DNA from: Bigelowiella natans CCMP2755
Lineage: Eukaryota > Protista > Cercozoa
DNA: 64,000 bases
Reading direction: 5' to 3'
Assembly: GCA_000320545.1 (NCBI GenBank)
Contig: ADNK01002290.1
Location: forward strand, 186,001-250,000
The translations under genes were made by a program, and so were the position numbers. How positions within the stretch are numbered: the first letter of the stretch is position 1; each line of letters begins with the position of its first letter. The notes below the pieces were generated by a model that did no database searches, was not told where the DNA came from, and worked only from the letters and a program-made list of their open reading frames with translations. Shown one piece after another: positions 4,049-53,141 of the stretch.

Positions 4049-4780
4049 GCATAAGCTGATTATGTTTGTTGTGATGTTTGTTCTTGCAACGTATGGGCAC
4101 AATACTTATCCGCTTTAAAGCCTGGAAATGTCTCCCTATATGAAGCTCCAAAGCCCTATGATCGCAGCGTAGAACTGGTGCGTACAACGACAGCAACATC
4201 AGTCTGTGGAATGAGGATGATGATGATGAGGATGAATGTTTTTCTTCAATTGTCTCTGTTCTGTCATCATCACCAAGGTTGCGTTACCTGCTAGGAGTGT
4301 AGCAGTCAGCCGCTGGTTCAAAGGCAGAGGTCTCACACACAAAATTTCAATATTGAGTAACTAATAAAAAAAAAGAAGTACCCTAAGCTTTAAAGCTCCA
4401 TCATGTCTTTTTGAGCTTTAGGTTATCTTCTCACCCTGCCGTCGCATGTATACTTTGTTAAGCTTCTTCCTATGTTGGCCTGTGGTGGTGATGGTTTTCT
4501 TAGCGAATATAACCACCGTTAGACGGAAAGCAGCAGATTTCTTCAATCGGTGAGAAGATGTTTAGACGCTATTAATACCTACTACCTCTGAATCATCCTC
4601 ATTGCTTCTCGCGTCTTACTTGATATTGATTTCTCAGATTAGAGAGAGAAGGTTTTGTCGTTGACCGCACACAATGGCAGCTTTTTAGGTAATTGTTGTT
4701 TGGTATAATTCATTCTAACCATTGCCCACGGGTTGAAATCCACATCTCTTCTCTTTCTTTCGATCAGATACAACGATGCC
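1642..4780 (-). CDS. Probable multi-exon gene, low-complexity protein of unknown function
   Basis: Open minus-strand segments bounded by GT/AG (e.g. TSSHRLKKSAAFRLTVVIFAKK ~4440-4560, HRLMLLSLYAPVLRC ~4100-4210, poly-E/K 3283-3500), separated by microsatellite-filled introns. No recognisable domain; limits approximate. Confidence 0.3.
2869..2904. repeat. (TA)n microsatellite
   Basis: Perfect AT dinucleotide run. Similar runs at 3868-3905, ~58187-58217 and ~60380-60414. Confidence 0.95.
3716..3788. repeat. 39-bp-period tandem duplication (2 copies)
   Basis: agtactgaatgcatgcaatggattYtggtatgta starts at 3716 and again at 3755. Confidence 0.9.
3868..3949. repeat. Compound (TA)n(CA)n microsatellite
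   Basis: Seen directly. Confidence 0.95.
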
Positions 4781-5396
4781 ATTGCGTTTCCAAGGTAAAA
4801 ATGTGACAATAGGAGACATCATGTAGATGCAAAGATAAGAATCCGAGTTTTACTTCTTAGTTCCTGTTTGAATTAGGTATCGTAGGAATGAAATCGCAGT
4901 GCCAGTGCTCAACGTGCGTTCTGTTCTCGGCCATTAATGAAACCCGAATAAATCGCACACACGTATCTGTATGTGAGAGTTAAGCAAAAACAGCATCGTC
5001 CAAGGGGAATGCTTTCGAGAAGCGAACTGGATCCATACAGTGTCGTTCGCTCGCAGAGTACCGAACCGTCCACGGCGAAAGAAAGAAAGAAAGAAAGGGG
5101 ATGCGAAACCTGCATTCTGCTGGCTAGAATTGAGTTTTCCTCAAGTTCAACTGCGTCGTCAGCGGTCTCTGGAGCTCCCCGGTTGTGTTTAGTGCCTTGT
5201 GCTCTTTTTTCTCTGTTGTTTGCCAGGAACTGTTTCTGTGGTCTGACAGGCTGCTCTCATCGCATCGTGTGCAAACAATCCTTGATCTAGCCTCCTCTCA
5301 TGCACGTGCGACAGATGTTCAACCCTGCGCGCGGTGCGTGCTAGCGCTAGAGCGCGTGGAAACATGCACCTTCGTGGCTCGCAATCCTACTTGATA

Positions 5397-6553
5397 ATTG
5401 ATTGTCTGAATTTGTCAGTTCAACTCGACCTGCATGCCAGCGTGGCAGCAGGCCAGCTTGCATTCTGGCACATCCCTGATTGTGCGATGACCAAACGATG
5501 CGAACAATGCCAGAATGCACGCTGGCACGCACCAAACGAAACGTGCAATTTGCATGTCGTTCTTCGTGAGAACGTTCAAAAACACACAAGAACAAGTGGC
5601 AATGAACGCTGACTTGCAGCAAGCACTTCCTGCAATCAGCGCGTTTGCACGTCACGCGCCAGCCTGCTGGCAGCGTGCACCACAACTGGCACAACCAAGG
5701 GCACCACAGTTCCCGCAAGCCACTCACTTGAAAACGTGACGCACAAAAGACAACGCAGGGAAAAACTGCAAGGGAAGGATGCACGGCAAACTAGCAAATG
5801 TGAGACCTTCGTTCAGGAGGTGTGGCTGCACCAGCATGCACCAGCTGGCCAGCGCAACAAGGCAAACGTGCTGACAAACAAGCAAGCAAACGTGATGAGG
5901 AATCACACTGGCACACTTCTGAAGTGTGGCAAGGCACGTTTGCAAAGTGCGAAACACAGTGCCTCGAACCAGCTTCAGTGAGGACTGAAAGGGCAAGTGA
6001 AACTCTGGAACTGAACACCGTTTTGAACGCAACGAACGTGACAAGCCAGCAAGACACTTGCAAAGCACGAAACGCAGTGAAGCGTCCACGTGGATGCGTG
6101 TGCACTCACGTGTTGACAAATGCAAAGACAACGATGAAAAGCTGCACTTCCAAAACGTTGCAAGACGTTCACAGTGCACGAAGCGCAGTGCCTTGTTCGT
6201 GTGAGCTCCATGCAGCCAGCCAGTGAGGACCAACTGAAGACCAGCAGGATTGTGAAATTGGCACACTGCTAGACTAGCCATCATGGAGAAGTGTGACCAA
6301 CAGCAATGTGGCGGACGAGGCAATGCACGTGCTTTGAGCAGGAACTCCCTGAAAGCTGCATCCAAGCGACGATCCACGGTCGGCAATTGACGGTCGGGCA
6401 ACACAAGGGAGAGCTGCACAACGATGTGTCATCACACTTTGCAACAATTTTTCGGCTCTTTGTGCAATTCTCCAACCCCACAAGCATGCCAATTCCCCGA
6501 ACTTCCACAAGCATGGCAGAGTGACAGAGCACTGAACGTTTTTGCCTCAGATT
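5397..6553. other. TpA-depleted domain 1 (probable hypermutated repeat or foreign DNA, origin unidentified)
   Basis: By-eye scan finds only 3 TA dinucleotides in ~1.15 kb, all in CTAG (5791, ~6269, ~6274). TA returns abruptly at 6554. Overlapping Tyr-free ORFs on both strands. Confidence 0.85.
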
Positions 6554-7219
6554 TAATCGGCCTGTAAGTCTTCATAACATTATGCCATTAGATTGACCAG
6601 AAATCTACAATGACGACATCTAAAAAATGTAAAAAAATCGAAGGAAGACATGGTGTAAGATGGTTGGATAAAAATTCGGTGATTTCTGTGGCTACCGTAT
6701 GCGCAGTGGCTCATCTTTCCCGCCGTATTAGAGAAAATCACCGCAGGGATGATAGATTTTTACGCTTTTCTCTTGTCGCAATTCCTCTATCAGCACGAAA
6801 TGAAGACGCAGCAAAAAAATAGCATGTATTTTCGGATCTGATGAAAAATCAAGCGCGGAGCCGATAGTCACAGTTGAAGAAAGGTGTGAGCAGGTGGTGG
6901 TGGAAGTAAATGGAGAAATTCAGTAGCCACAGTATGCGTCTCGCCCCTCGGAATTTTTGCACAATATGATTTAAGTGACCAAAGTCTCTGTTGTAGCATT
7001 TGTCGGCCACGGTCTATTCTTGCAGCACTATTCCTTGTCCAACCACCACAGTGTGCTTCAATTTGAATTAGTGCGAGATCGATGGTGAAACTGGAGAAAG
7101 GGTCCGGGGAATATGAGGGGTATTTAGGGGAAGAGAAAGACGTTTAAGAGTAGTTAGCTACGACCGGTTCATGACGTATGAAATGTTTGTCCTCTACTCT
7201 AACAGACAGCAAAAGAAAC

Positions 7220-9450
7220 ATGATGCGGTCTTTATCCCGAAGGATTCTCCTCAGACCCCAACGATCATTGCGCCACCTCTCGTCCCTCTCGAACCTTCTA
7301 TCCGGATCTATAGCTGAATTAGATCCAGAGATTACTGAGATTATTAATGGAGAGAAGAAACGCCAAACGGAAAGCTTGAACCTCATTCCTTCAGAGGTGA
7401 TAATAATGGTGATGATGATCATGATGGGTGGTGGTGGTGGTGGTGGTGGTGGTAGTTATGGTGTACTTCTTGGAACACGAATACAGGAGTCGTTATTCCT
7501 CTCTAAAATATCTTGCATCAAAACTTGTTAGAACTTCACCTCGAAAGCTGTACTTGAAGCACTCGGATCCGTGATGCAGAACAAGTACTCAGAGGGCTAC
7601 CCAGGAGCTCGGTAATAACAAACGACGAGTACTAGATTGGCTTCTTCTTCTCCTTCTTCTTTTTCTCCTTCTTTTTTTTCTGCTTCTGCTTCTTTTTGTG
7701 TTGACGGATAAATCTGGCTGCTGCTGCTTTATAAGGAGGTGGTGGTGGTGGTGGTGGTGGTTGTGATATATGACGAAACGTGTTTCTACTACTACAAGAT
7801 ACTATGGTGGAAACGAGTTCATCGACCAAGCGGAGACCCTGTGTCAAAAGAGGGCTCTAGAGGCTTACGACCTTGATCCTGAGAAGTGGGGCGTTAACGT
7901 TCAGGTAATGTAACAGTATTATTCCGCAACTGCGAGAAGATAACCACCAAAATACTTTAATATATTCATCTTATTCTCCTAACGATTATACGCTTTCATC
8001 ATGATCCATTATTAGCCAATGTCTGGATCTCCGGCAAACTTTTATGCGTACACTGCTCTCCTCAAGCCTCACGAACGTATCATGTCTCTTGACCTTCCTC
8101 ACGGAGGACACCTTTCCCATGGATACCAAACACCAACGAAGAAGATATCGGCTGTCTCTACCTACTTTGAAGTTCTCCCATATCGTCTAGATGAGGGAAC
8201 AGGTTTGATTGACTATGAAGCTCTTGCAAAGATGGCAACTCTTTACCGTCCGAAGCTTATCGTTATGGGAGCTTCCGCGTACCCACGTCATATTGACTAT
8301 GCGGCAATGAGAAAGGTAATTCAATGAAGTTTGCTTCATAAAGGAGGAAATAAGAAAGGCGTATATAACCGAAGAGATGGATACGTTTGATACCAACCTC
8401 CAAGAAAAAAATCGTTGCGCAAATGATGTTTTATCAACCAACTTGGGTCGTCGTTACATGCTCCCCAAGATCATTGGAGTTGTAATGAACATCAAGATGC
8501 AGCAGCACATAAATTGTACTCACAAATGTGACAATTTCTTGGCATTTCCTTCGTACGGTTTGACAATATGGTCGTGATTCTTTCATGATTCTTTCATCAT
8601 TCATCAGGTTGCAGATGCCACCGGGTCCTACTTGTTAATGGACATGGCTCACATCTCCGGTCTCGTAGCTGGGAAAGCTTTACCTACTCCTTTCGAGTAC
8701 GTGTCAATCAAGCTGACTATGCTGCTTTTTCTTGGAGCAACAACTGATGTGAATGATGTCATATATGCCATCTTGAAGCTTCGTAGTAGAATTTCTCTCA
8801 CCCATTATATATCCGCAATGTCGCACGCCGAGTGCCATTAATTTAGCATCAATATCGCTCGTTGCGTGTTGTGTGTGTGTGTGTGTGTGTGTTTGCATGC
8901 AAGGAAGTAGCCTTCCTCTGATCTTCTTACAGTAATCATCATCATCATCATCATCATCATCTGCTAGATACGCTGATGTGGTTACCACTACAACGCACAA
9001 GTCTCTAAGGGGGCCCCGCGGAGCTATGATCTTCTACAGGAAGGGCGTCAAAAAGGTAGAATATCAAGTGGTTTTGTCATGCAAATACGCCACATGAATG
9101 TTATATAGTCGTTAGTTGGTGGAGGTAGCATTTTGTTCGTCTCTTCCACAAGTTATAGTGTACTAGTAATAATACTGCAAGTATCTAAAAAACAAGGGCG
9201 TTGCGTCATCATTCTGTTACCGTCTCACAACGAGTATCTACCTTAAGAGTAGGAGCAAGATATCTTAGAACTTGAATGCCGACTCCACAGGTAAACAAAA
9301 AGGGAAAGGAAATAATGTGGGACCTTGAACAAAAGATCAACATGTCGGTGTTCCCTGGTCATCAAGGTAAAATATGCACTCATTTCAACCAGATAAATGC
9401 TGCTGAAAGAAGTACCAATATTTTGAGTAGAATCTGCGTACATACACATA

Positions 9451-9482
<32 letters not shown>

Positions 9483-9790
9483 CTTTTATGACTTCTAATG
9501 CATAATAACTGACGTTGGAGTCTTTTGGGCTGTTTGGTTGCTAAAGAACGGACCACATACCGTACAACACATGAAGCAACAAAAATAAAGTTAAACCACA
9601 CTCCTCATCATTTGTTGAAAACAATTAGGAGGACCGCACAACCACACCATTACTGCTCTAGCCGTGGCTCTCAAGCAGGCAAACACTGAGGAGTTTCGTG
9701 AATATCAGGCACAAGTAATAGTCCTGTTAATTTGTACAATTCCCCTCACCACCACTACTACTATACTACTACTATTACTATCCTCATCCC

Positions 9791-9826
<36 letters not shown>

Positions 9827-10562
9827 CAGGTTCTTAAGAATTCTGCTGCAATGGCAAACCGAATGCAAAAACTTGGGTACAGCCTGGTGTCCGGTGGTAC
9901 CGACAATCACCTGATGCTAGTAGACCTTCGTGAGAAAGGGGTTGATGGGGCAAAGGTCGAGAAACTACTGGACCTTGCTAACGTCACAATCAACAAGAAC
10001 ACAGTTCCTGGAGACAAGGTACTACTGGTTCACTACTACACCATTTATCTACCTATCACAATTGTAGTAGTTGAACTCAACGAACCGACCGACCGACCAA
10101 GTTATCTAAATTTCGTACCCACTCGTTTCATAACAAGCACGTTTGCACTACCTTTTTACAATACGTCATCTCAGTCCGCGATGGTGCCTGGCGGGATCAG
10201 AATGGGAGCACCTGCACTCACATCTCGAGGATTGATGGAAAAGGATTTTGAACAAGTAGCAGAACACACACAGCTCTAGTTCGTACCGATGATCATGTGG
10301 TCACCAATGGCGACTGACAAACCACATATTCAGGTTGGAGAATTCGTCCATGAAGGAATTCAGCTAGCAATTGAAATTCAAAAGGAAGCTCCTTCAAGCA
10401 AGGTGGTGTTCTATTCCTTGAAATGTGCAAAGTAATATTCTCATGGAAAATATGCTTTCCCAGCTGAAGGATTTCGTACCATTGCTCGAAAATGATGGCG
10501 TCTCCCAACTCAAGGAAGAAGTGTCGAAGTTTGCGTCTTCATTTCCATCAATTGGGCAGTGA
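7220..10562 (+). CDS. SHMT: Serine hydroxymethyltransferase, mitochondrial type, 12 exons
   Basis: Exons 7220-7396, 7532-7611, 7799-7904, 8016-8315, 8608-8696, 8968-9055, 9291-9366, 9629-9714, 9830-10018, 10175-10255, 10334-10402, 10464-10562, all GT-AG. Motifs [40 protein letters not shown] lysine in [27 protein letters not shown]. Arg/Ser/Leu-rich presequence [22 protein letters not shown]. An upstream in-frame ATG exists at 7178. Confidence 0.97.
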
Positions 10563-10999
10563 TATCCTTAATCCTGAACACTTTTTACATCCATTTGTAA
10601 ACATTCACTTGCATGAATAGAAGAAGCTGTTCTAATCAACACTGTGATGTGGCTCATGATTTTCCCCCTAAATGTGATGTCCATTCATTGGCCTTGAATT
10701 TTTTTGGTTGGTGATGTGAAATGAAGCCCATGCGATTACTTTCCTCGCTGAGGTTCGTCACACGTGCGCTACGCTCGCCTCAAGAAACCCCCCCTGCTAG
10801 CCTGCAGGCTTGTCCCGCCTAGTCGCGCACGCATTGACATGCCAGCATGCTAGCTAGGTAGCATGGCCATGCTAGCATGACAACTGAGTGATCACACACA
10901 ATGTAGCCTCTGTCAGTGTGCATGATGTAGAAATTTGGCGTGGCGTAGCTTGCGATGATGGCACGCAGTGGTGCTGGTCTCTGGGTCTACTAGTCTAGT

Positions 11000-13735
11000 T
11001 GGCACGGCAGACGTGGTGGTGCAACGCTGAAACGATCCAACGTGGGGAGCCTGGAGAATCGAACCTTGCATGATGAGAACGATGACTAGATCAATTTGCC
11101 AATGCACCGCACAAGCGCAGCACAAGTCATCCAGATCGCACGTGCGTGCACATGCAGCATGGCTCCGATCTGGTGGTGGTCCAACTAGATGAACTGAGTG
11201 GAGCGAGCGAGCACGTGCACGTTTGCACGCACTGTGGACACAACGTGACAAACGTGGTGCCACACTGGCAAAGTGCATGCATGCCAGCATGCGTGCGCGC
11301 ATCACACGCACAGCCACGTGCACAGTGCCAGCGTGCGTGCCTGTCATGCTGTTTGTTTGTGCACGCTGACTTGTGTGGTGTGCATGCAGCAATGTGTGCA
11401 GCAGTGTGCACGGTGGAACGTTTGCAGGTCTGGACTTGGGGAGCTGTCAACAGTTCCGCGACTGATGTGTCGTTCATCATCCGTCACGTGTTCATTCATG
11501 GAAGGCGATCGAGGCCGCTTTCGTCTCTTCCCAGATGCGTGTTTGCCAACGCAACCGCACCTGCAACAGGGCAACACAACACACAAAAGATGAGTGCATC
11601 ATTGATGACTTTGACTTGTGAATTGTGTTGTCGGCATCCAAACAGCTCATCAGCATGCACGTTGCTTTGAGCAAACGCCCTGCACTCCAAGCACGGGAGA
11701 GGTCGAGAATGCAGAAATCAAGAGCAGATTTCATGCTCCTTCTCTTTCACTCTTTCACTTTGATGACAGGTTTCGTGATCATCATTGCACTCATGACTCT
11801 GTGCAGGCAAGCTCCACAAAAATGCATGCAGGTGAGTGCCATGGAAACAGTTGCTGCTGTTTGCTTGCAAACACTCTTTGCTGACGTGTTTCATGCATCG
11901 AAACTCCAATTCGCCTCCGGAGACAGGGTTTCGCAAATCCACATCCTGCAGAAAAGTCAGGGTTCAGTTTTCTCAATTGTTCATGACAAATCGCGCACCT
12001 TCTCGTCCGAGTCTTTGAGTTCTGCTTGGGCAATTTTCACCCCACTTGGTGTCTCGGAACACAAGTTGCACATCCAACGTGTGATGATTGAGTGCAGCAG
12101 AGCAACTTGCACACACACCGTCCCGGCACAAACTTGACCCATCCATTGCAGACTGCAGACAACACGATGCAATGCCAACTCCCCCCCCCCTCCCTCCCCC
12201 TTTTCCAGCACGTGCAAGCTCCAGAAGCTGTTTGCCAACCGCCCTGGGGGCTGGGACGTCGATGGAACCGTTGGCCTGAGGAAAAAACACGAGGGGTCAG
12301 GCGTGATGGTCAGCAGTGCGTTGCGAAGTGAAAAAACGGGGTTTGGGTGGGATTTTCCACCCGCGAAGCTTGCACACTCAAACAGCATTCGCACCAAACT
12401 TGGAAAAAAGAAATTGAAAGCAAGTCCGTGTTTGGAGTGTCTGAAGTGCGGGAAAAGCAAAGGTGGTCATTGGAATTTCAAGGTGCAGGGAACAAACGGA
12501 GGACTTCGTGCATGCTTGGGAGGAGCACCATCCCGAGGATTGGAACACCTCATTGGAAGTGGACCGCGCGTTCATCAGGGCACTCACGTTGCGAACCTGA
12601 TGCGTTGAGGGCGGAAGCTCCGTGGATGGGACAAGTGCACCGCGGCAAGCAAAACGTTCCACGGGACTCTCTGATGTCGGCAGAATGCACAAACGAAGAT
12701 GAGGCCATGATGAAAGTTGGCCAAACGCAGTCATTTGAACTCACTGAAGGTGATGCCCCCCCACGGTGTGCACCTGGTGCCCCAAAACTCGACCAGCAAA
12801 AAAAAAGAGGAGGCGAATTGGTGTTCAAGGAAGGAAAAGATGGGAAAAAAATGCCTGTCATGGAGAAGGAGGGCTGGCTAGGAAAGGCTGAAGGGAGAAA
12901 ACAAACTTCACGGGAAAGGGGACTGTGGAAAGAAGGCACGACAGCAGACGGAAGATCATCGAAGTGGGCAGGCGAGCGTGAAGACACGAGTGCTGCAAAA
13001 ACGCTCGCAAAGTGCAGAGACTTTGCGAGTGAAGAATCAGCATTGAAAAAATTCTTTGAAGAACACGGACATGCATTGGTCATGAGTCCGAAGGGCCACT
13101 CTGAAGTGGCTGGATCAGGAACAGAACGTTCCTGGGGAAAGACCAAACGTGACCGGCGGAGGATGCCCATTGAGCAACGCACAAGTTCTCGCTTCTGCCA
13201 GGACTTGAACAAGCTGTTCCACAAGAACTCCCCACCTTTGGAGAGAACGTGGAAGTGTGCACGTGAGGCAAGAGACTGTCGCCGCACGTGTCAAAAACTG
13301 GCAGAAGAGAAACCTTTGGAAAAGAGTGAATTGCACGAAATGGAAAGGATGATGGCCGAACAAAAATGCCATCGGTCTGTCCTGAGTTCCCACGTGTCAC
13401 ACTTGCGAAATGCACAAATTGACAACGTGACGTGACGTGTGAAAACACGTGCACATGGCACAGCACTTGTGTCCTCTTGTGTCGCCAAAAATCCTCTTGA
13501 GCGTGCTTGGATGGTCGAACTCACGCCCCAAAAAAACAAATGGAATGGCCTGCCAATCGCACCCACCTGCTTCGTGGCATCCCCTCTTCAAGCTCCGCCC
13601 TGATGTGGGCTCTGCGATGGATGATGCCGCCCAACGATGCGTCACACACACACGAAAGGACGAAGTTTGAGTCCATTTTCAAAAATCCCCTGCAATCGAT
13701 GCGTTTTTTTTTTTTTTGAAGTTGGGATTTTTTTG
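11000..13735. other. TpA-depleted domain 2
   Basis: ~2.7 kb with only 3 TA found by eye (~11086, ~11185, 12878), all in CTAG. Confidence 0.9.
12200..13435 (+). mobile_element. Degenerate DDE transposase relic (IS630/Tc1-mariner-like superfamily), frameshifted and hypermutated
   Basis: Motifs in order: WDVDGTVGLRKKHEGSGVMVS, GFGW, K(C)G...GG(H)W, SSGH...DAL, GKQ..RDS, KVGQTQSF, EGWLGKAEG..Q..ERGLW, LAKCRDFASEESAL, SPKGHSEVAGSG(T)E(R)SWG (cf. PKxHxExAGxGIEYSWG around the catalytic Glu), ARD(C)RRT(C), K(C)HRS. Frameshift near 12480-12570. Termini not found. Confidence 0.8.
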
Positions 13736-14307
13736 CTACATGCAAACATTTAGTGCAAATGGAACACAAATGTCATGTGTTTGTGTCTTCGTCAAGTTGA
13801 CATGACGTGAATTTGCAGGGTGCGACTTGCAATCAAATGCTTTCTTTCTCGGCTATTCATTTGCTTTTTGGTGTGTCGCTGTTTGACAACTTTTCGATCG
13901 AACCACCCTACAGGTAGTAGGACATTAGGTCAATACCCTAGTCATCTAAATACAGTGTTCACAATCACGTTGTCGCCACATGAAAGTGAAGTCATCATTA
14001 GCACAGATCGGGTTGTGAATTTTATCGTGCGACAATAACAAATGGGTGAAATCGCCAGTATGAAATCCCAGAGTCGGAACGTAGGAAAGAGACAGCTCCG
14101 AAAGGCAATGTATTTACAGATGCAGATCACGATTGCGTTTTGTGTTGTTTGCGGGGATGTGAGTAGCGTGCGCATGCAGCGATAGCAACAACTGATTTGA
14201 TTAGACTAATATACTCACATGTTCAATCATATTGAGACTGCGGTTTGTTGTTCCATACTGTGCGTAGACACACAAAGCCCGTTGAGGACAACATAACTTA
14301 GCTCACG

Positions 14308-16138
14308 ATGAAATTCGGAAAGAAGCTGTGTAAGTACATGCAGTTGAATGAGGACTCCGCAAACATGCTAATAAACTACAAGTCCCTGAAGAAAGCCATA
14401 AAAGAGATGCAGGCGGGGGACAAATCCGAGACTGATCGTGAGGAGAAGGAAATATATTTCGGCCACCTGCTGCTCAGTGAGATCAAGAGAGTCGACGCAA
14501 ACTTTCATCAGACAATTTCTTCACTGGCTCAAAAGAAATCGGCAATAAACCCTCCATCAGACGAAGGCAAAGATGTGTCCTCGGATGACGAACAGCTTGA
14601 TCAGAGTGCAAAACAGCTAACGAACTACGCGCACCTCAACACTGAAGCCGTTCGTAAAATAGTAAAAAAGTTCAAGAAGAAAGTCCTGGAGGAACCGTCA
14701 CCAAGGATCGAAGCGAAGCTCAGCAATAACGTATTGGCCCCTGATATGAAGCTGTCCAGCCCTGGCAGCCCATCCGCGTTGGATCGAATAATCAATCGCG
14801 CGCGTGAAAGGTCCTATTTCTCAAAAGCAGCATCAACAATACGATATAGACCCAGGATCGATAGAGAGGCGAGCACAGCGTTGTTGCCCGCACAGTCGAC
14901 AGTAGATAAAAATGGGGGATTCACTGGGGGACAAACAGTATCCATTCGGCCGTCAGCTTTGGCATATACAAAGGTTGGGATTAGCTTCTCGCTGTTGATG
15001 GTTATGATTTACCAGTTAAGTATTGACCTGGGTGTCAATGGAGAATATGACTCACTCGGCCAAATTGAGAGCTATGCGGTATTTCGCTCGCTCGGCCTGT
15101 TATGTCTCTTGGGCTTTTTTTGGACGATTACTCGCATCATCTGGAAGCTCTCAAGAGTTGGTATATTACTTCACTTTGGTATAATATGATCTGTTCTTCG
15201 CTGACGTTCTCCGTACTCATTCTTGTTCAGATGAAGAGGAGATCATAGTGTGCGCATGGACTGAGACTCCTGCGCACACAATTGAGTGGTGGCTCAGCAT
15301 GTTCATCACCTTCGCTTTGACGTTTGTGTTGTATCTGTCTGCCTCCCACTGGTCCGTTGGCAACAAGCACTTGCACATCTTTCCTCTCGTTCTATTATTG
15401 CTGTTCTCCATCGTCGGACTCTCGCCTTATCGGAGATTCAGGTTCTATAATATGGCAGGATTGAGCATATTTGAATGTGGTCTCATGCTGCCCGGATTCC
15501 ATGCAAACCCTTTCAGGAACACGCTAGGCTACCTTCAAAGAGTATTCCTATCTCCATTTAGGTCGTATTCAAGTATCACATTTGTTGCTATGGGTGCATG
15601 GCCAAAATTGTACTCTGAACATATATGGTGAAAGTCTCTATGATCTTTGTGGGATGATGTTCTCTCTTAACGCTCGAATATGATTCTTCTCTTGTGGTCA
15701 CAGCGAACCTTCGTTTACAGCGGTCCTCGTGGCCGATGTCATGACCAGCCTTTCACCAATATTCGCGGATCTTGTTTTCACTTCGTGTTACTACGGGAGT
15801 AGCATGTTCCAGCTAAATTTTCCTTCATCTCGAAGGAATATCTGTTGGCGCTCCAGATTTGGGATAAGAGGTGTAGTTATGGTGATTCCCTTGTGGCTTC
15901 GATTGGCTCAATGTTTCAGGGGCTACTACGATGCAGGAGAGATAAAAAGCCTCCTGAATGCTGGTAAGAGGCGTTGTTAGGGGCACAAGATCATCACTAT
16001 GCTCATCTCTCATAACGATTCAGGCAAATACTCCTCGTCCATCCTGGTGGTTGCACTAGGGGCTTTCCTAGACAAGGAAAAGTCAGCCCCTATTCGGATC
16101 ACGGCTGCTATATTTAAGTGCGTGTGCTTGTCTATCGC

Positions 16139-16182
<44 letters not shown>

Positions 16183-16821
16183 CTCTCTCTCTCTAGGACG
16201 ACATGCCATTCATTTAGTTTTGTGCGGTGTCATCAGTACCATGTTCGTCACATATTGGGACTCCGTAAGGGATTGGGGGTTATGCTCGTGCCAGCACCGG
16301 ATGCTAAGACAGAGGCTCAAATTCCCGCAATGGGTATACAAGCAAATACTTGTTGATACCGTGAATGGAGAGCTTCAATTGCTATGCGTCAGGTGTATTA
16401 CTTCGCGCTTTGTACGAATCCTGTTCTCCGGTTGCTCTGGACTCTAGTTCTCGTCAACTTTCGATTCGAAGAGGATAGCGATTTTTCGCAGGTAGAACTA
16501 TGCACCGATCCGCCCATTCGTTTCCACATGGGGTTTCAGACTTGACAGAGGGGGGGAGCTCTTTATGACTATTTTGCTGTCCCAGGCTTTCTATCTGCCA
16601 ATTCTAGCAGCCTTTGAAATTTATCGGCGTTCACAATGGTAAGGAACTGTATTCTTTGTGAAAGCACGTTATTGGAGATCTCTCATGATAGTGTGTTTCA
16701 TTCCAGGATGGTGTTGCGCGTCGAGTGGGAAAATGCCAAAAGGGAGATAAGCTCACAAGATCAAAACAATAATGCTTTACAGAATTCTTTCGTGGAGTCG
16801 ACAGAGATGTGCAGATTGTGA
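14308..16821 (+). CDS. SPX-EXS domain phosphate exporter (PHO1/XPR1/SYG1 family), multi-exon
   Basis: SPX start MKFGK..., NYKSLKKAIK, and lysine cluster LNTEAVRKIVKKFKK. EXS motifs ADVMTSL, RLAQCFRGY, NAGKYSS, YWDSVRDWGL, YYFALCTNPVLRLLW, EIYRRSQW-MVLRVEWE join across GT-AG introns. Stop at 16821. Confidence 0.92.
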
Positions 16822-17335
16822 AAAAAATCATATACATGTGCCGTCGCACACATAATGCCAAAACATATCAACAAACACTTGTAAACTTAACGTCTGCCTT
16901 GATTGAATTTCATTGTCATTTGCATTGCATTGTTGCAATCTAGCAATCATAACAGCCACATGCTAGCATGGCCGGACGTCTCTAGATTTTGCCAATCATT
17001 TGTTTGCCGCACGCAACGCGTTGCGCTCATGCATTCTTCATCTCTTAGTCATTCATTCAGGCATTCAGTTGCATTGTCTGACAGCATGCAGATGATGCAG
17101 CCTAGCTTGGCATGAATCTGAGGCCGTGCGCGGGTTGTTGCTTCACTGCAGTAGGCAGAAGAGCTGTGACTTGGGGCATTGACAAGTTTGTTGCCACGCC
17201 GTGTTTCAATGGTTTTTCAAAGAATCAAACGACAAATCCATTGAACAAAAAAAAACGCAAAAAAGAGCTTGAACAACAAACACTTAACGATCACCATGTG
17301 AACGAACGCTTCGGCGTGAAAAGTGTGTGTTGCTA

Positions 17336-18317
17336 GTGTTGTTGTGTGTGCAGTGTGTGCGTTTCCAAGCAAAAAGTGTGGCGCGCAGCGCCCTGTCTCC
17401 AGCCTCCAGCCTCACACACACAGCGTGCGCAGCCCGCAACTTTTTCAGGGGCCATTGCAACCTCTGTGCGCAGTTGAACAGGGGTCATTGATGAGCTCTG
17501 TTGCGCATTGACGGAGGCCAGTGGAGCGCGAACAGAGGTCACCGTGGCCCATCCTCCGTTTGCCAAGCGGTGTGCCAAGGACATTCGACCCTGGAGTCTT
17601 TGTGTGCAAAGGAGAAACCGGCATCTGCATCATCAGATCATGGATCGACGACCTCATTGTTGTTTGCGACAACCCCAAGTTGCGAGAGAGACTTGTCTCT
17701 GCTCTCAATGCCAAGTTCGGCGCAAAGGATCTGGGTGGACGAACCAAGCTTGGTGTTCAGGGATGCAAGTTCGAAAGACAAAGAAGGTGATTGTTGCTTG
17801 TTGAACCAACAACCGCTCATCGAGCGTTTGGTCAATGACTTTGTGGAAGACGGTGAGAAGCACTGTTCACTGCCAATGGATCCTCGGATGAAACTGTGTT
17901 CTGCAGGACATGCCAGCATGGGGACATTGCGCGCGCGCGTGTGTGTGTGTGTGTCATGTGACACGTGTGCCACGCTGAAAGACATGGATCATCTCCTTCC
18001 ATGCAAGAAGTGTGAACATCAACAGCTCAGATCAAAAAACCAATTGACGGCCATGATGAATCGCAATGCGACGAAACGAAGCGTCTGACAATGACAGAAC
18101 ACGAGAAAAAAGGGCTCGCATCGCTGCACGCACTGCGCGCACCGCCCGACGACATCGACGACATCGACGGCAGGACAGCAATGCTTTCAAATGCATGCAA
18201 CGTCTGATGCAAGAAACAAATGGACTTGACCCAAGCGCCATGGCTGCTGCTCCGCACAGCTCCATTGGGATGACCATTGAAAATTTTTGATCATTTCATT
18301 GCACCCGTCTTGCACAT
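17336..18317. other. TpA-depleted domain 3 (core; partially depleted flanks ~16900-18650)
   Basis: No TA found in ~980 bp. Flanking survivors are mostly CTAG/TAG. Confidence 0.9.
17521..17900 (+). mobile_element. Ty1/copia reverse-transcriptase relic
   Basis: DPGVFV...IIRSWIDDLIVV...LNAKFGAKDLG, then after a frameshift LLNQQPLIERLVNDF...SLPMDPRMKL. This matches the copia RT order DPC-YVDD-KF..KDLG-SQ..YI-TPM. Confidence 0.8.
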
Positions 18318-18661
18318 CTAGGCATGCTAGCATGTGCAGATTTGTGTGTGTGTGTGTGTGTGTGCACATGCATGTGCATAATGGACATCACATTGCTGTT
18401 GCTGTGTCCATTGTCCTGTGTGACATGGGACATGCGAACACGGCCATAGACGGTGGCGCCTTGCCCAGTTATTAGAGCACATTGACGATGCATGACAATG
18501 GACATGCATGCACATGATGTGCACTGTGTCCATGGTGCGAGGCAACATGTGATGCTCTAGATGCTGTGATTTCACCCCATGAATTCATTTCACACAAGGA
18601 GCCAAGGAAAGCCTAATCCATGCTGGCCACATCTAGATGTTTGGGCGATTATCAACTGCAT

Positions 18662-21600
18662 TTAGATGCGCTTGAATGACAGCACAGCTAGAAATCCACA
18701 TTGTAATGGCCTGAGGGGATGAAGCATTCTCCTAGCATGAGGGTTTAGAAACTTAGTCAGTTTGAATCCTGCTATGGGGTCTACTTTGGATCTTTGACAG
18801 ATGAATCCCAAACTATCACCAGCTTTAGCACAATGTATAGAGAATGAAACTGTGCGCAAAGAGTTGTGACAAATTTTGCATTCACCTGGTTCAAGAATTG
18901 GCCAATCAAAATCGTAGTCAATGGGAGTTAGAATGCTTTCTAAACTTCGGTCGTCATCTTCGCAGTATCTAATGTTGGCAAGATCCTCATCTCTATCAAG
19001 AGCAGCAGCCCCGAATAAAAATTCGCGGATTGTTTTGGCTTTCAACAGCAAAACTTTCTTCTGGATAAATTTTTGGAAACTTTCTGTCATCTTGCATTTG
19101 CAGGACACCGAAGCAATTAGAATTTCAGAGAGCTTTAAAAAGGTTTGTCCAGGAGTGTCGGAATCATCAAGCTCGTGTTGCACATGCGGAAGAATCTTGG
19201 TGAGGTTCTAGATTAGACAGGATTTTCCATTCGATGTTGTAATCAGTGTAAATATGCAATGTATGTGAATAAGGATCAAGTCAGAAATCTTCTAAATTTT
19301 TTGTAAACCTTGCCACATTCTGCCTTCATCATAGAAGAAACCTCTTCGATGAGCACCTGGAATGCATGATCGCCATAAATCATTGGCGATACTGAAATAT
19401 GAGAATCCAAAATGAGTGCTTTAGTGGAGCGAATCTCGTTCGTTGACCCTCCATCATCTTTCAACTTCGGCGAGAAGCTAACATACGCAGCAATCTGAAA
19501 CAACAATCTAAGTGAGGTAAAGGAAGTATTCTTTGAAATATGTATAATTAGGCATAGGTACAACTATTTTAGTACATCAACCCTAATGAAGCTCTCAAAT
19601 CTATATTTAAGATCTTTTATCCAATGATCAATTCCATGTTGAAGCCGATCGACCTCACTAGAGTCAAATTCACTTTCAGAATCATATTCATCGCTACTTC
19701 CGTAGATATATTGATCATCCAGGACGCACTGTACCCATTGCGCGGCAACTTCATCGTCATCTATATTTTCAGGAACATCATTTAAAAACCCTAAAATCTC
19801 ACATCGATTGCGGACTTCTTTACAAATTTTTTTCCCGAGAATTTGAAGAATATGCTTAGCCACTTTAAAAACTAAAGGCAAGTATTCCTTGTTCCCACAG
19901 CATATAAGGTAATAACAAAGACTTTCAATGCCATATGAATGAGTTCCAACATCCAAGTGTGATCCTTTCTCTCTGTACGACCTCAAAGTGACGTGGAGCA
20001 TGTGCTTCGCAAACTTCACATCATTTTTGTCGATGACAATTTTAGCAAGAAGTTCCCAGGTTTTTGACGGTCGCATATATGAAGAGAACACAGAGCTGCT
20101 TAATTCCATCCTAGATGCTTGTTGTCCCCTTTCTAAGAGCCAACCCTTTAGTTGGGATTCGATAGATTGCTTATCATCATTTGTGCAACAAAATCGAAGG
20201 GCCTGTGTTGGAAAGAAACATGCCGACGTAAATTTGCAGGGAAATATAGTTCTTGTTTTTGCATCAATGCCCAGTCCAATGTTTAATGTTCAAAGTATCG
20301 ATTACTTTCTCATAAAGAAACACGGTGGGAGCCCGCATGAAACGAGCTACAATCTTAGTGCAAAAGATATGCTTCAAGTCTGAAGAAAGTACGCTGCCGT
20401 TGTCCGTTCTTATAGCGTTGAATCCTTTCCCGTCGAAATCTATCTGCTTATATCATCTTTATCAATATGACTAATAGACTGAGCAGTATGATGTAATCTT
20501 TACCTTCTCAGCCAAAGATACCCAATTAGACAGTTTCTCGGGGGAGAGTACGATCTCAGCAAGGTTGAGTATCAATATCCAGCTACTCCAAACCTCGAGA
20601 GATGAAGTGAGAAGCAGTGAGAAAAATGGGAAGGAAGGAAAAACAACTACGGAAAAATCAATTATTGCTTCTCTAACTGAGGGCACACACATGAGGGTAT
20701 CATACTTGTTGCCAAATTGGATTCCGTTTGCAGCCATCGAAACTAAAATTTGGATCATGATAGTTTATAATCCATTGCTTGGAGTGCCCTAACGAAGTAA
20801 ATTACAGGGTATTAAAATGAAATAGACGACTCTCAATTGTGGATTTGGCTTGTTTTAACAAGAATCTAAAGATCTAAAGATTAGCACCGTTTAGGACACT
20901 TAGTTCGTTGTGCAATGTTTCCATAACAAAGAGATGATACTCGACCATATTTTCATCTAGAATGAGGTAGAATCATTTATTGCAAAGGTAGATGCGTTTT
21001 CCTCGCAATTATTAGTTAATCATATAAGCGTACGAAACCTCGGTCATCTTTCCTTGTTTGCTCTTCACAGAAAATTTTAATGTGCTCCAAAAGTTTAAGT
21101 ATTTCGTCGCATAGATTGAACATAATCTGATGTTCCATCTTGGGGTTCATTTTGAGATTCTTTTGTAGACTGAGATGAATTAAATTTCAGCCCCAAGTTT
21201 CGACGCAACATTTGTTCTAAATGTAAGAATGTGTACCGTATAAATAACTCCGTGACGATACTTTTTAGGTTCTGATCGGATTGTTTCCTGTACACAATTT
21301 TCCTTATCCTTTTTCGATTCCCTTCTTTCTTGAGAATTGAAAGATTTAAAGGTATTTCGTTATCCCCTTGATCTAAATTCTCATTACGTCTGGCTTTAGC
21401 GGCTTGAGCATATGCTCTTGTGTTTGTGTGACAACAAAATGAATGAGAGAAAGCCCAGCAGATTGTATACAAGAGAAATGAAAGGAAAAAGGAGGATTTT
21501 CTCCAAATGACAAATGACATCAAGACATGAAGAGCTGCATGTAGATGCAGTAGATACTTGTTACCCACAGAGTGGTGTCACGTATGTAAAAGGATCATGA

Positions 21601-22600
21601 AATCATGAAATGAACACATATAAAATGGAAATGAAAACATTCACGAAACAACTAAAGGAAAGATGTAGAAGCCAAAAGCAAGGACATGGATGTAGATAAC
21701 CTCGCAGCTTCTTCGGCTACCGCAAAATAACCCAGGTAGTAACTGTGATTTCGCAATTTATCATTCTTCATTGAAAGTGTCAAAACAAAGTAGACCAAAA
21801 TTCACATGAATACATCCATTGAATAGCTCAAAAAATTCTATTTGACATTTAACATTTGTTAAATAGACCTTTTTCCTTTGATCACGATTTTAGCTCCGAA
21901 TTTTCTATATTGTTTTTTGTAATAAACACCGAGGTACTAGATGTCAACAAATTCCATGTCAGAATGATCAGAAACAACATCAACACAACGAACAGATGTA
22001 CGATGTACACGCTGGAACCTTAGCTGCAAGAGCTCTTTCTTCCTCAATGTTCATCACATTTTCCTTAGGTTTCATTTTTTCCATTAGATGCTTTGGCTGG
22101 GGCATTGATTGATTTGGAGTTTGAATGGGAATTGTAGTAGATTCCATGACACCAACAACGAGTGTTCGCGTTGACAAAAACGGTGGCAAAAGTGTCTGAA
22201 TTTTGTTGTTTTTCCTTGTCGTAACTGCCATTCAGGACGTGTCAATTTTTCGAGAAGAAACGTCTTCGCGGGGATTCACATCAATCAATCAATCGTTCCA
22301 TCTTTGGAATTTCTTGCAGTGCACGTCAGTTGGTGCCAGTTCAAGCTCCCACTTCATTCATTCATTGAAGCATCCTCGCATTGCGGTGTCTGTGGATGGA
22401 CACTTGCGAATTGTGCCTCGCATCCATTGGTTGGTGAGATGCCATCAAGTGAAGGCGGGCATCGGAGAATTGATCTCACTCTTCCTGTTCAGACCACCTT
22501 CTCCATTGGATGGGTGAGGAGCGAAGATCTCGATCTCAGTTGCTCACTTTTTGCACGACGTTCGTTTTGGTTTGTGAATTTGAATCGCTCATTTTTGGTT
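18662..22600 (-). CDS. Multi-exon gene of unknown function, possibly 5'-damaged or pseudogenising
   Basis: Successive minus-strand ORF blocks 21980-22231, 21095-21420, 20471-20758, 19564-20190, 19276-19500 and 18662-19200 (C-terminal CKIC..HC..C). The putative 5' exons at 22230-22600 lie inside TpA-depleted domain 4 and contain stops. Confidence 0.45.
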
Positions 22601-23220
22601 GTCGCACGCCCAAGATGAACAAGATCCACGCATGCACTGGTTTTTTGTCGTCACGGCCGGCAACTGAATTGTGTCCATTTTCACCCTTTTGTTCAGATGT
22701 TGCGGCTGGTGCGAGCATCCTCATCCGGCAAACGCGGGCTCAATGGCGGCTCCATCAAAGACGTTCTTCGCGCCGTGAACGACGAGGTAGTGGAACCGTT
22801 GGGTGTTGGGCAAGAAACACAGAATGTGTTGCAGGGCAGGCGCAGTGGCGCACCAGTCCAAGGAAGGAAGGCCTACTTCGAGGTGATCGGCCTCGACAGG
22901 ACAAGAACGTGCAAGGCCAGATTGCAATGATTGCATCGGAGAAAGATCTGATGAATGAGAGAATTGACTGGCTTTTCTGTTCCAGGACCAATGTTTCGAC
23001 TCGTGCGAATGATCATCAGAGGCTGTGAAAGAAAAAGCAGCTTCAATGTGGTGCGGGTCACATGGCCATCCATTTGTCCATTCAAACTGCTGCGCGCACG
23101 TCACAGCTGAATGACCACCGCTGTGTTGTGTGCGTGCTGAACACCTGCACCACAGCTTGCTAGCTTGACAGCTAGACAGCACTGGCTCCAAACCTGCAAT
23201 TTGTGAGAATTTTTGTGCAA
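22224..23220. other. TpA-depleted domain 4 (partial to ~23520)
   Basis: 4 TA in ~1 kb: GTAG 22788, CTAC ~22874, and two CTAG at ~23160-23175. Confidence 0.85.
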
Positions 23221-23512
23221 TTAGCCAGTCCTGCATGCTGCATGGCATGCCTAGATGCGTGCACAGCGCACGCGCGAAACATGTGTAACCGCACAGACAC
23301 AGTGCACATTGTGTGCATTGCACGTGTAATCACTCCTTGCACACTTTGGCACGCTAGCACGACAGTGCCTGCTCCAGTGCTGTGGTTGAAAACACATTGC
23401 ACTCGTGGAAATCTCAGTTGCGCAAATGTGCACAGTGCTGAACTTTTGTTGTTTTGTGCACGTTTTCCAGAACTTGTCGATGCTTCAGTGCATTGAGTTG
23501 TTCGCAGCACAA

Positions 23513-39700: not shown

Positions 39701-39778
39701 ACGGATCCCGAGTCGGGAGATATTTACTACTACAACACAATTACCAAGGAAACATCATGGGACAAGCCAACAAGTTGA
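34572..39778 (+). CDS. Myosin with N-terminal WW, motor, IQ, MyTH4, Pro-rich and C-terminal WW domains (class IV-like)
   Basis: P-loop [60 protein letters not shown]. MyTH4 motifs LFKNILGYMGDR and EVYCQLMKQLTRNP..GWDLM..FPP. C-terminal WW LPPNW...YYYNTITKETSWDKP. Exons 34572-34621 + 34793-34856 splice to a WW: WEAKRAVDGSRYWYSPGLNKYSWAVP. Confidence 0.95.
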
Positions 39779-40480
39779 AGGAAAAGAAGACTGGAAACCG
39801 ATTCCTTTGGATGAGCACACACTAGTCTAGCAATGCTCATATAGTTGCAGTACAATATTTCTACTTTTGTTCGATTCGTCGCATTGAATGTACTACTAAA
39901 TGTCGCGGAATTCTGATTCCTGGATCACAGTGTATGAGAGTGTAAGAATGGGCGAGGGGTGACGCTACGTGCTCACAGTCGTTCTCTCCGCTGTCTGAGC
40001 TGTGGATTCCGAATCAACATTAGCACACGCACACCGAACATGGCATGGCTAGCTCGCTCTAATGCACAACACGCTAGCACGGCTCCATGTATGCAATGCA
40101 GCGTCGTAGCTGCTGCGCGTGTACACTGCGCTCCATCCCGCACACAGAATGACTGCGATTTTTGTCATGGCATCTACTTTGGCTAGATCGATCGCACACA
40201 TATCCACATCACACCTAGTTAGCTACTCGGCATGGTGGTTGTCACGCGCTGTGCCTTGTGAGTGCGTAGCTCATCATCGTCTCGTATGACATGTGCACAT
40301 GTGCACATATCAGACGATATCTAGATGTGATGGCAGCGTAGCCTATTGTAGACAGATGACTTTCAATCATGACTGCACACAAGGTAGTTGCAGCACGTTG
40401 TACAATTGCAACCTTGTTTAATGATAGACAATATAATATATGTAACATTTATACATTACTGTGTCTATTATTTTAATTAA

Positions 40481-45923: not shown

Positions 45924-46648
45924 AGCAAGCTGGCATATCTAGTATATGTGTGTGCATATCCACATATGTGAGCATTGTAGTAACTTAGCTAATTCGAAAT
46001 GTTCTTCACGTAATAGCGTACAGGCGTGTTACTCGAGTTGGCCATGCTAGCATGATAGAAGTGCATATGCTCAGTGCATATACTAGACATATGATGCTAA
46101 TAGTGTACGGTATAGTGTTGCTATCCGTAGATGTCGCAGCTATACAGTATAGCTAGCAGTAGTTTCCTAGAATCACAATGCGCGACTATTGCTGACACAT
46201 AGCAAGATGTAGACCACAGTAGAGTGCGCACGTACATCTAGACATGCGCATGACACCTACTCCAAACGAGTGCTGTGTATAGAAATGCACAACACGCGTG
46301 CATATTGATCATTGTCTATAGCTTGATAGCCGTACGGACAAAATTGTTATTAGCATTGCTAGATTGAAGTATGTTTACATGTGTATGTGTGTAAATGTTC
46401 TTTTTTTAATTAATAATGCTTCTCGTACGACGTCTAGACGTACACGGGGAAGCCCTAAAGTAATGTGGGATCTATGTGCTGCCCCCCCGTGTTAACTCTT
46501 AGGAGTGTTCAGGGTGACGAGAAGGTGTCTAATGGCTATAATATTGATGACTGATACAATGAGTATCCAGATACCAGTGTGTAAAACACATATGCCGGCG
46601 GTGTTTTGCATGATACGATCTCATTTGATGTTAAACTGCATTTCAGCA

Positions 46649-53051: not shown

Positions 53052-53090
<39 letters not shown>

Positions 53091-53141
53091 ACAGCAACCG
53101 GGAGGGGGAAGAGAGTCCCCACGAACTACTACTACTCCGAT

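What the first reader, a model, noticed from the sequence alone, without database searches (positions are those of the whole stretch)
11000..13735. Reverse-RIP-like hypermutation: systematic TpA -> TpG/CpA conversion across a transposon
Seen: ~2.7 kb with only 3 TA dinucleotides, while nearby DNA has about 5 per 60 bp (e.g. 6541-6600). CpG remains abundant and the 362-aa ORF has no Tyr. Direction can be read from the transposase: positions where the family motif (as recalled) has Tyr or Ile are single TA transitions. Examples: xYG->K-TGC-G (~12447), GYW->G-CAT-W (12468), GIEYSWG->G-ACA-E-CGT-SWG (13118-13138; the CGT needs two changes), KYAR->K-TGT, RDYRRxY->RD-TGT-RRT-TGT. Established: fungal RIP and 5mC decay run the opposite way (CpA/CpG->TpA/TpG). 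Inference: a host process targets repeats and drives A:T->G:C at TpA. Candidates are DNA adenine deamination by a TadA/ADAT-like enzyme (TadA prefers a 5' T/U) or miscoding of an oxidised thymine made by a TET/JBP enzyme. I know of no described pathway with this signature, but cannot search.
Basis: partly seen in the sequence, partly recalled or inferred. Interest (0 to 1): 0.95.

Follow-up and report, generated by a model that had tools for sequence, protein, structure and literature searches.

The report
TpA-erasing hypermutation of dead transposons
A dead transposon and three other stretches in this window have had nearly every TA turned into TG or CA, which matches a host hypermutation of foreign DNA reported in a 2026 preprint on the alga Bigelowiella natans; what may be new here is that TA inside CTAG is largely spared.

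Summary
Window 11000-13735 holds 3 TA where about 168 are expected, and CpG is not depleted. The tract is not unique: four unrelated TA-free tracts lie between 5 and 24 kb.

The direction TA->TG/CA is supported in three ways:
- Missing TA (351) roughly equals excess TG+CA (338).
- The ORF is a frameshifted, N-terminally truncated relic of a large SAP-chromo-DDE-like transposase family. All 11 consensus Tyr positions are lost in it, 7 of them to Cys or His codons one transition from Tyr.
- Of 160 family proteins, only this copy has no Tyr.

The signature is the one measured directly in mutation-accumulation lines of Bigelowiella natans (bioRxiv 10.64898/2026.01.13.699255). The window's composition and Rhizarian gene relatives fit that species, but identity is not proven.

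Details I did not find in the preprint:
- The surviving TAs are almost all CTAG.
- CTA/TAG contexts survive only at tract edges.
- Each tract has graded edges a few hundred bp wide.

The enzyme (adenine deaminase or thymine oxidation) and the targeting cue remain unknown. Repeat induction is not supported.

The parts
10997..13736 (.). It holds 3 TA, all CTAG; GC is 52%.
   Evidence: missing TA 165, excess TG+CA 144, TG 269 against CA 265.
10738..10996 (.). Left graded edge of T2. No TA of the DTAH type remains; the 13 TAs are 7 CTAG, 4 GTAG and 2 CTAC.
13737..13933 (.). Right graded edge of T2. Only CTA/TAG-context TAs remain. Normal TA density resumes at 13934, about 370 bp before the SPX gene start.
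12246..12482 (+). Transposase relic, piece 1 (family profile positions 237-314).
   Evidence: hmmsearch with the A2 profile, E 9e-22, tblastn.
12484..12564 (+). Transposase relic, piece 2, shifted by one frame (profile positions 316-341, including the second catalytic Asp motif). The match is weak.
   Evidence: E 0.15; it is collinear with the two flanking pieces.
12572..13429 (+). Transposase relic, piece 3, in a third frame (profile positions 343-627, including the catalytic Glu motif region).
   Evidence: E 1e-60.
12347..13435 (+). The 362-aa Tyr-free ORF. Its 269-aa ATG-started part exists as a gene model (P0001).
5396..6553 (.). Core of tract T1 (extended tract 5060-6553). It holds 3 TA, all CTAG. 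Its content is unidentified.
   Evidence: no Pfam hit.
17286..18318 (.). Core of tract T3 (extended tract 16951-18378). It holds 1 TA, a CTAG.
17521..17790 (+). Probable Ty1/copia reverse-transcriptase fragment inside T3. It continues in another frame to about 18000.
   Evidence: RVT_2 E 0.015, below Pfam's cut-off, frame reading.
22223..23160 (.). Core of tract T4 (extended tract 22007-23560). It holds 2 TA (GTAG, CTAC) and is less saturated. Its content is unidentified.
14308..15189 (+). Neighbouring host gene (start of an SPX-domain protein) with normal TA content. It serves as the unaffected control.

Best explanation
The tract is a dead, truncated DNA-transposon copy. It has been saturated in place by a host process that converts TpA to TpG or CpA on both DNA strands. 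Three other nearby relics of mobile or foreign DNA carry the same mark. This is the process measured in Bigelowiella natans mutation-accumulation lines.

Shown here:
- The polarity of the change.
- A quantitative TA -> TG+CA balance.
- Symmetry between the two strands.
- Restriction to discrete tracts next to unaffected host genes.
- Dependence on a 4-bp context: DTAH sites are erased first, CTA/TAG sites later, and CTAG hardly at all.

Inferred:
- The chemistry is enzymatic deamination of adenine that has a 5' T, read as G at replication. It is disfavoured by C two bases upstream and by G immediately downstream.
- Targeting follows a silencing mark on foreign DNA rather than sequence repetition.
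- Activity spreads a few hundred bp into flanking DNA.

A side effect is that losing TAA and TAG stop codons inflates ORFs in all six frames, and some of these are annotated as genes.
For: TA depletion and its size. Four tracts that are unrelated to each other. Mass balance of 351 missing TA against 338 excess TG+CA, with TG about equal to CA in T2-T4.

Family homology with two frameshifts and a missing N-terminus. The 11 consensus Tyr positions became Cys x4, His x3, Arg, Trp, Phe and Asp, with none kept. Three homologue DNA loci have TA observed/expected of 0.56-0.84. Only the window copy is Tyr-free among 160 family proteins (median Tyr 3.5%).

Context: in the cores, DTAH is 0 of 221 expected, one-sided contexts 2 of 125, and CTAG 7 of 15. 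In the edges, DTAH is 5 of 68 and one-sided contexts 24 of 38.

Published de novo data: TpA-only A:T->G:C at about 6e-7 per site per generation in integrated virus DNA, plus low-TpA CDS enriched for DDE and RT domains. My hand tally of the preprint's Table S2 finds only 20 of 206 events with G 3' of the edited A, against a share of 21.5% (binomial P 6e-6).

The window's GC (44.5%) and background TpA frequency (6.1%) match the preprint's values of 44.9% and 6.0%. The nearest named gene relatives are a B. natans paralogue and Reticulomyxa.
Against: - The organism is not proven, because the window's own proteins are masked in the databases.
- No less-mutated copy of the same element was available, so ancestral states come from distant relatives (32-38% identity), not from a copy-versus-consensus spectrum.
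- T1 and T4 have no recognisable origin, and the RT call for T3 is below threshold.
- No transposon ends (inverted repeats, target duplication) were found.
- CTAG density varies locally, with CTAG-rich islands also in normal DNA. CTAG survival is therefore somewhere between 0.5 and 1.4 of background, not a firm 'immune'.
- The published 3-nt contexts are asymmetric (CTA T>C 17 against TAG A>G 3), which a simple symmetric rule does not predict.
- The enzyme is untested.
Confidence: 0.8

Rival explanations
1. The phenomenon is the same but the chemistry differs. Thymine in TpA is oxidised or modified (5hmU/5fU, by a TET/JBP-type enzyme) and miscodes as C. On this reading the mutated base is T, not A.
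For: TA is self-complementary, so T>C and A>G are the same event seen from opposite strands. Nothing or 69 separates the two readings. From my own knowledge, not tested here: 5hmU in dinoflagellate DNA is enriched at TpA.
Against: No direct evidence. The preprint found an ADAT2-like candidate, but only by homology.
Confidence: 0.15
2. The trigger is repeat-induced, as in fungal RIP: homology between copies triggers the mutation.
For: The targets are transposon relics, which are typically multi-copy.
Against: The four tracts share no similarity. The protein database returned no relative of the relic above 38% identity. The published NCLDV target is single-copy.
Confidence: 0.1
3. RNA-level A-to-I hyperediting (ADAR-like) of element transcripts occurred before reverse transcription or integration.
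For: ADARs prefer a 5' U. T3 looks like a retroelement.
Against: TG and CA excesses are about equal on the coding strand, whereas RNA editing would give TG only. T2 is a DNA transposon. The depletion extends into non-coding flanks. G 3' of the edited A is disfavoured, whereas ADARs favour a 3' G (my own knowledge). The published mutations accrue in situ.
Confidence: 0.03
4. The TA-free state is native or selected: the elements arrived TA-free, or TA is selected against in them.
For: None specific.
Against: Unrelated elements share the mark. Catalytic-domain Tyr residues are replaced and the ORF is frameshifted and truncated. Relatives elsewhere have normal TA and Tyr content. TA loss equals TG+CA gain.
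Confidence: 0.03
5. It is a base-calling or assembly artefact of a modified base at TpA.
For: This cannot be excluded from a single assembled sequence.
Against: An artefact would have to be 100% penetrant over 2.7 kb while sparing CTAG. The preprint sees line-specific heritable changes in Illumina data against an older reference.
Confidence: 0.03

Closest known systems
TpA->TpG/CpA hypermutation of integrated viral DNA in Bigelowiella natans (Mettrop et al., bioRxiv 10.64898/2026.01.13.699255)
   Same: The dinucleotide target, direction and strand symmetry are identical. TpA-depleted, CpA+TpG-enriched tracts also appear. DDE-endonuclease and RT genes are among the low-TpA sequences. Genome composition matches.
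   Different: Here the targets are saturated transposon relics of 1-3 kb, not large, still-mutating virus inserts. By the preprint's criterion of three consecutive 1-kb windows these tracts would mostly be missed. The CTAG sparing and graded edges do not appear in the preprint's main text.
Fungal repeat-induced point mutation (RIP)
   Same: It is a genome-defence-like, tract-limited, saturating transition hypermutation of mobile DNA, with some leakage into flanks.
   Different: The direction is opposite: RIP converts CpA to TpA and makes DNA AT-rich, whereas here TpA is converted to CpA/TpG and DNA becomes GC-rich. There is no evidence of repeat dependence.
ADAR / APOBEC antiviral hyperediting in animals
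   Same: Deaminase-type clustered transitions on foreign nucleic acid. ADAR shares the 5' U/T preference.
   Different: Both DNA strands are affected in situ, and a 3' G is disfavoured. APOBEC acts on C rather than A.
Tc1/mariner-IS630-like DDE transposases (for the ORF itself)
   Same: The family conserves a D...D...E pattern. There is a weak DDE_3 match. The best structural matches of an AlphaFold model (pLDDT 81) are Mos1 mariner, SETMAR and other RNase H-like folds.
   Different: All matches are below significance (Foldseek E 8e-3; Pfam below cut-off). The family carries N-terminal SAP and chromo domains and has no Pfam model.

Membership tests
B. natans-type TpA hypermutation tract | Strong TpA depletion together with CpA+TpG enrichment in a discrete tract | tested here: met
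   TA observed/expected 0.02, TG 1.71, CA 1.46. The preprint's thresholds (Rho TpA <=0.43, Rho CpA+TpG >=1.52) are met in parts of all four tracts.
B. natans-type TpA hypermutation tract | Direction is A:T->G:C at TpA | tested here: met
   Seven of 11 consensus Tyr codons are now TGY or CAY and none is kept. Missing TA is 351 against excess TG+CA of 338.
B. natans-type TpA hypermutation tract | Both strands affected (TpG and CpA products) | tested here: met
   TG 269 against CA 265 in T2; 112 against 100 in T3; 90 against 86 in T4.
B. natans-type TpA hypermutation tract | Target is foreign or mobile DNA | tested here: inconclusive
   Met for T2, a transposase relic. Weak for T3, RVT_2 E 0.015. 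T1 and T4 are unidentified.
B. natans-type TpA hypermutation tract | Sequence comes from Bigelowiella natans | tested here: inconclusive
   GC and TpA frequency match. Rhizarian relatives and a Bigna1 paralogue were found. The window's own proteins are masked.
B. natans-type TpA hypermutation tract | Elevated de novo mutation rate at the locus | not testable with these tools
   This needs mutation-accumulation or population resequencing data.
Fungal RIP | C->T at CpA, producing TpA-rich, AT-rich DNA | tested here: not met
   The direction is opposite and GC rises to 52%.
Fungal RIP | Dependence on sequence duplication | tested here: inconclusive
   There is no similarity between tracts in the window and no close relative in the database. 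The whole genome was not searched.
DDE transposase (Tc1/mariner-like RNase H fold) | Catalytic D, D, E in an RNase H-like fold | tested here: inconclusive
   The family consensus keeps all three motifs. The window copy lacks the first, because its N-terminus is missing. The fold and Pfam matches are weak.
Ty1/copia reverse transcriptase (T3) | RVT_2 domain above Pfam's gathering score | tested here: not met
   15.3 bits against a cut-off of 31.6. The homologue search was blank. The resemblance remains a lead only.

The most novel reading that the evidence does not exclude
The mutator reads a 4-bp palindromic context. DTAH sites are erased, CTA/TAG sites are several-fold slower, and CTAG is 25-100 times slower; alternatively, CTAG is protected by a modification. 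This rule is not in the preprint's main text. It argues against a housekeeping ADAT2/3, whose tRNA substrates often have G after the edited A. It gives a concrete in vitro test for the enzyme. The process would then be a general, non-repeat-induced transposon-inactivation system in a rhizarian, spreading a few hundred bp into host DNA, and far more widespread than the 124 published clusters: four tracts lie in about 20 kb of this window.
Probability: 0.45. Interest if true: 0.7.

Novelty: already known. Interest (0 to 1): 0.5.

Why it matters
A dinucleotide-specific A:T->G:C hypermutation of foreign DNA is a defence-like process with no worked-out mechanism, and it is known from a single preprint. 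This window adds four points:
- The process has run to saturation on ordinary transposon relics, both DNA and retro elements, not only on giant-virus inserts.
- Its tracts have graded edges close to intact host genes.
- It has a 4-bp context rule that could help identify the enzyme.
- Erasing TAA and TAG stop codons creates false long ORFs that get annotated as genes. That is a practical warning for annotating this genome.

Tried and rejected
- Looked for similarity among the four tracts (repeat finder, blastn, tblastx): none beyond microsatellites.
- Looked for terminal inverted repeats around T2: nothing convincing.
- Pfam scans of 30 ORFs from the tracts: only a sub-threshold RVT_2 hit.
- Homologue search with the T3 ORF: blank. 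The length window may have excluded full-length pol proteins.
- Look-up of the window's own gene model: not on record, so the organism could not be read off.
- tRNA and Rfam scans: nothing.
- The preprint's supplement lists gene IDs only, so the window could not be matched to its cluster list.
I redid the step by parsing the hmmsearch output file.
- I first read CTAG as fully immune (ratio 1.43). Splitting cores from edges and finding CTAG-rich islands in normal DNA weakened this to 'by far the most resistant context'.
- I considered that CTAG might be created by the process. TA-targeted transitions cannot produce it. Creation by C->T at CCAG/CTGG is possible but would not explain the near-background density.
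Full report
OBSERVATION. Window 11000-13735 contains 3 TA dinucleotides, at 11087, 11186 and 12879. TA observed/expected is 0.02, against 0.72 for the whole window; TG is 1.71, CA 1.46 and CpG 0.78. At the background TA frequency of 6.14% about 168 TA are expected, so Poisson P is about 7e-68. The 362-aa ORF 12347-13435 has no tyrosine.

The tract is not unique. The longest TA-free gaps in the window define four tracts, with cores at 5396-6553, 10997-13736, 17286-18318 and 22223-23160. The next-longest gap anywhere else in the window is 202 bp. The four tracts show no detectable similarity to each other by seed extension, blastn or tblastx.

DIRECTION OF CHANGE. Three independent lines agree that TA was converted to TG or CA.
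- Mass balance. Against the background dinucleotide frequencies the four cores lack 351 TA and carry 338 extra TG+CA. GC rises to 51-53%. TG and CA are about equal in T2, T3 and T4, so both strands were hit.
- Homology. The ORF belongs to a large uncharacterised protein family, with 3229 representatives at E <= 1e-3. A profile of 50 members matches the window in three collinear pieces in three different frames: 12246-12482, 12484-12564 (weak) and 12572-13429. These cover profile positions 237-627 of 647. The copy therefore has two frameshifts and lacks the N-terminal third, including the first catalytic Asp motif. At the 11 profile positions whose consensus is Tyr, the window has Cys four times (TGY), His three times (CAY), and Arg (CGT), Trp, Phe and Asp once each. 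None is Tyr.
- Relatives elsewhere are normal. Three homologue loci have TA observed/expected of 0.56-0.84. Among 160 family proteins the window's gene model is the only one without Tyr; the median is 3.5%.

'KYAR' is not, because the family has Phe at that position.

WHAT THE ELEMENTS ARE. Family members carry N-terminal SAP and chromo domains and a C-terminal domain with a conserved D...D...E pattern. One member gives a weak DDE_3 match. An AlphaFold model of a full-length member has mean pLDDT 81. Its best PDB matches are the Mos1 mariner transposase, then SETMAR, Tn5 and other RNase H-like folds, but none is significant (best E 8e-3). 'DDE transposase' is therefore likely but not demonstrated. 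No terminal inverted repeats were found.

T3 contains a probable Ty1/copia reverse-transcriptase fragment that is split by a frameshift. Its RVT_2 match has E 0.015, below Pfam's cut-off, and a homologue search found nothing. T1 and T4 have no recognisable content.

T2 is intergenic. Its right edge lies about 370 bp upstream of the start codon of an SPX-domain gene (14308) whose TA content is normal.

CONTEXT RULE. The surviving TAs are not random.

I delimited the tracts only by the absence of TAs that are neither CTA nor TAG ('DTAH'), so the counts of the other two classes are unbiased. Over these 7672 bp, densities relative to background are as follows:

| Context | Density relative to background |
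|---|---|
| DTAH | 0.017 |
| One-sided (CTAH or DTAG) | 0.16 |
| CTAG | 1.43 |

Splitting the cores from the edges gives these observed counts against expected:

| Region | DTAH | One-sided | CTAG |
|---|---|---|---|
| Cores (5869 bp) | 0 of 221 | 2 of 125 | 7 of 15 |
| Edges (1803 bp) | 5 of 68 | 24 of 38 | 21 of 4.6 |

The CTAG excess at the edges reflects CTAG/CATG-rich islands, which also occur in normal DNA at about 40040-40110, 45960-46260 and 54100-54450. CTAG survival is therefore best stated as 0.5-1.4 of background, against less than 0.02 for everything else.

In T2 all 13 one-sided sites lie in the 456 bp of edges and none in the 2740-bp core; if they were spread uniformly, P would be about 1e-11.

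A simple model fits these numbers. Suppose C two bases upstream of the edited A and G immediately downstream each slow the reaction about 5-10-fold, and the effects multiply. CTAG carries both features on both strands. One-sided sites carry one feature on each strand. The one-sided contexts do differ among themselves, though: relative to background density, ATAG/CTAT survives at 0.02, while GTAG/CTAC survives at 0.24 and TTAG/CTAA at 0.21.

LITERATURE. A full-text search found one directly relevant paper: Mettrop et al., bioRxiv 10.64898/2026.01.13.699255. It reports the following.
- In 15 mutation-accumulation lines of Bigelowiella natans, 231 of 302 nuclear point mutations fell in an integrated giant-virus region and a virophage region.
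- The rate there was about 6e-7 per site per generation.
- The changes were almost exclusively A>G and T>C at TpA.
- Mutations appeared in only some of the lines.
- 324 low-TpA CDS are enriched for DDE-endonuclease and RT domains.
- 124 TpA-depleted, CpA+TpG-enriched clusters of at least 3 kb exist genome-wide.
- An ADAT2-like protein is proposed as a candidate enzyme.

The main text does not contain 'CTAG', 'flanking' or 'context'. Its Table S2 gives 3-nt contexts. My hand tally for scaffold 10 is as follows.

| A>G context | Count | T>C context | Count |
|---|---|---|---|
| TAT | 34 | ATA | 33 |
| TAA | 32 | TTA | 35 |
| TAC | 22 | GTA | 30 |
| TAG | 3 | CTA | 17 |

So G follows the edited A in 20 of 206 events. 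The corresponding share among this window's background TA half-sites is 21.5%, giving binomial P of 6e-6. This independently supports the context rule. The asymmetry of 17 against 3 is unexplained.

ORGANISM. This is not proven. The window's own proteins are masked, and its gene model is not in the contig index. Circumstantial evidence points to B. natans. GC is 44.5% and background TpA is 6.1% of dinucleotides, against the preprint's 44.9% and 6.0%. The named relatives of the window's myosin gene are a B. natans paralogue and the rhizarian Reticulomyxa. The signature itself has been reported only in this species. I put the probability at about 85%.

MECHANISM AND RIVALS. The following points are shown:
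- The polarity of the change.
- Symmetry between the two strands.
- Tract restriction with graded edges.
- The context dependence.

The following are inferred:
- Enzymatic adenine deamination, as the preprint proposes.
- Targeting by a silencing mark rather than by repetition.
- Spread into flanking DNA.

Thymine oxidation cannot be separated from adenine deamination by sequence, because TA is self-complementary. RNA-level ADAR-like editing is contradicted by strand symmetry, by a DNA transposon being a target, and by the disfavoured 3' G. Native TA avoidance is contradicted by the loss of conserved Tyr, by the frameshifts and by the normal relatives. Repeat induction has no support here or in the preprint, whose viral target is single-copy. 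An artefact cannot be excluded from a single assembly but is unlikely.

CpG is about 98 above the background frequency in the cores, and one Tyr became CGT. Both suggest that the T and the A of a single TA are sometimes both converted.

CONSEQUENCES. Without TAA and TAG stop codons, the tracts hold 26 of the 35 ORFs of at least 100 aa that lie between 4.5 and 24 kb. One of these is an annotated 269-aa gene model. By the preprint's cluster criterion these tracts would mostly be missed, so such relics are probably much commoner than 124 per genome.

VERDICT. The phenomenon has, however, been described and measured experimentally in a 2026 preprint, so I rate it already known. The additions worth following up are the CTAG/DTAH context rule, the graded edges and the saturation of ordinary transposon relics. 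Nothing here concerns human sequence, an animal or crop virus, or a toxin.

Noticed in passing
window 10868, 16959, 18323, 46043 (exact); near-matches at 10838, 11280, 17909, 54120, 54194-54213, 40070: The 12-nt palindrome CATGCTAGCATG occurs 4 times exactly. With up to 2 mismatches it occurs 19 times, against 3.7 expected. Three of the exact copies sit at edges of TA-free tracts. It is part of CTAG/CATG-rich intergenic islands that also exist in normal DNA, and may be a regulatory or dispersed-repeat motif.
   Followed up: partly
window 4500-24000; gene model P0001 = 12626-13435: Losing TAA and TAG stop codons inflates ORFs in all six frames of the tracts: 26 of the 35 ORFs of at least 100 aa lie there. 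At least one is annotated as a protein-coding gene, which is a source of false gene models.
   Followed up: partly
preprint Table S2, not the window: In the published de novo list, T>C at CTA (17) far exceeds its strand-equivalent A>G at TAG (3). Four T>C events are listed in ATG or ATT context, although the text says all the GC-biased mutations fall on TpA. Several TAs were hit on the T in one line and on the A in another.
   Followed up: no
tract cores; codon 13127: CpG is about 98 above the background frequency in the cores, and one consensus Tyr is now CGT. This suggests that both bases of one TA are occasionally converted (TA->CG).
   Followed up: no
window 50001-51000: An isolated AT-rich kilobase (GC 30%) in a window that averages 44.5% GC.
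   Followed up: no
window 59001-60000; 59078-59161; 57186-57271: Strong negative GC skew (-0.35) around a (TAC)28 microsatellite, with an (ACA)29 array nearby.
   Followed up: no
window 51493-52224 and 52354-53277 (+): Two adjacent ORFs with Zn(2)-Cys(6) binuclear cluster domains, a 'fungal-type' transcription factor domain, in a probable rhizarian genome.
   Followed up: no
window 37709-39778 (+): A large exon of a myosin with MyTH4 and WW domains. Its closest named relatives are a B. natans paralogue (46% identity) and a Reticulomyxa class VII myosin.
   Followed up: partly
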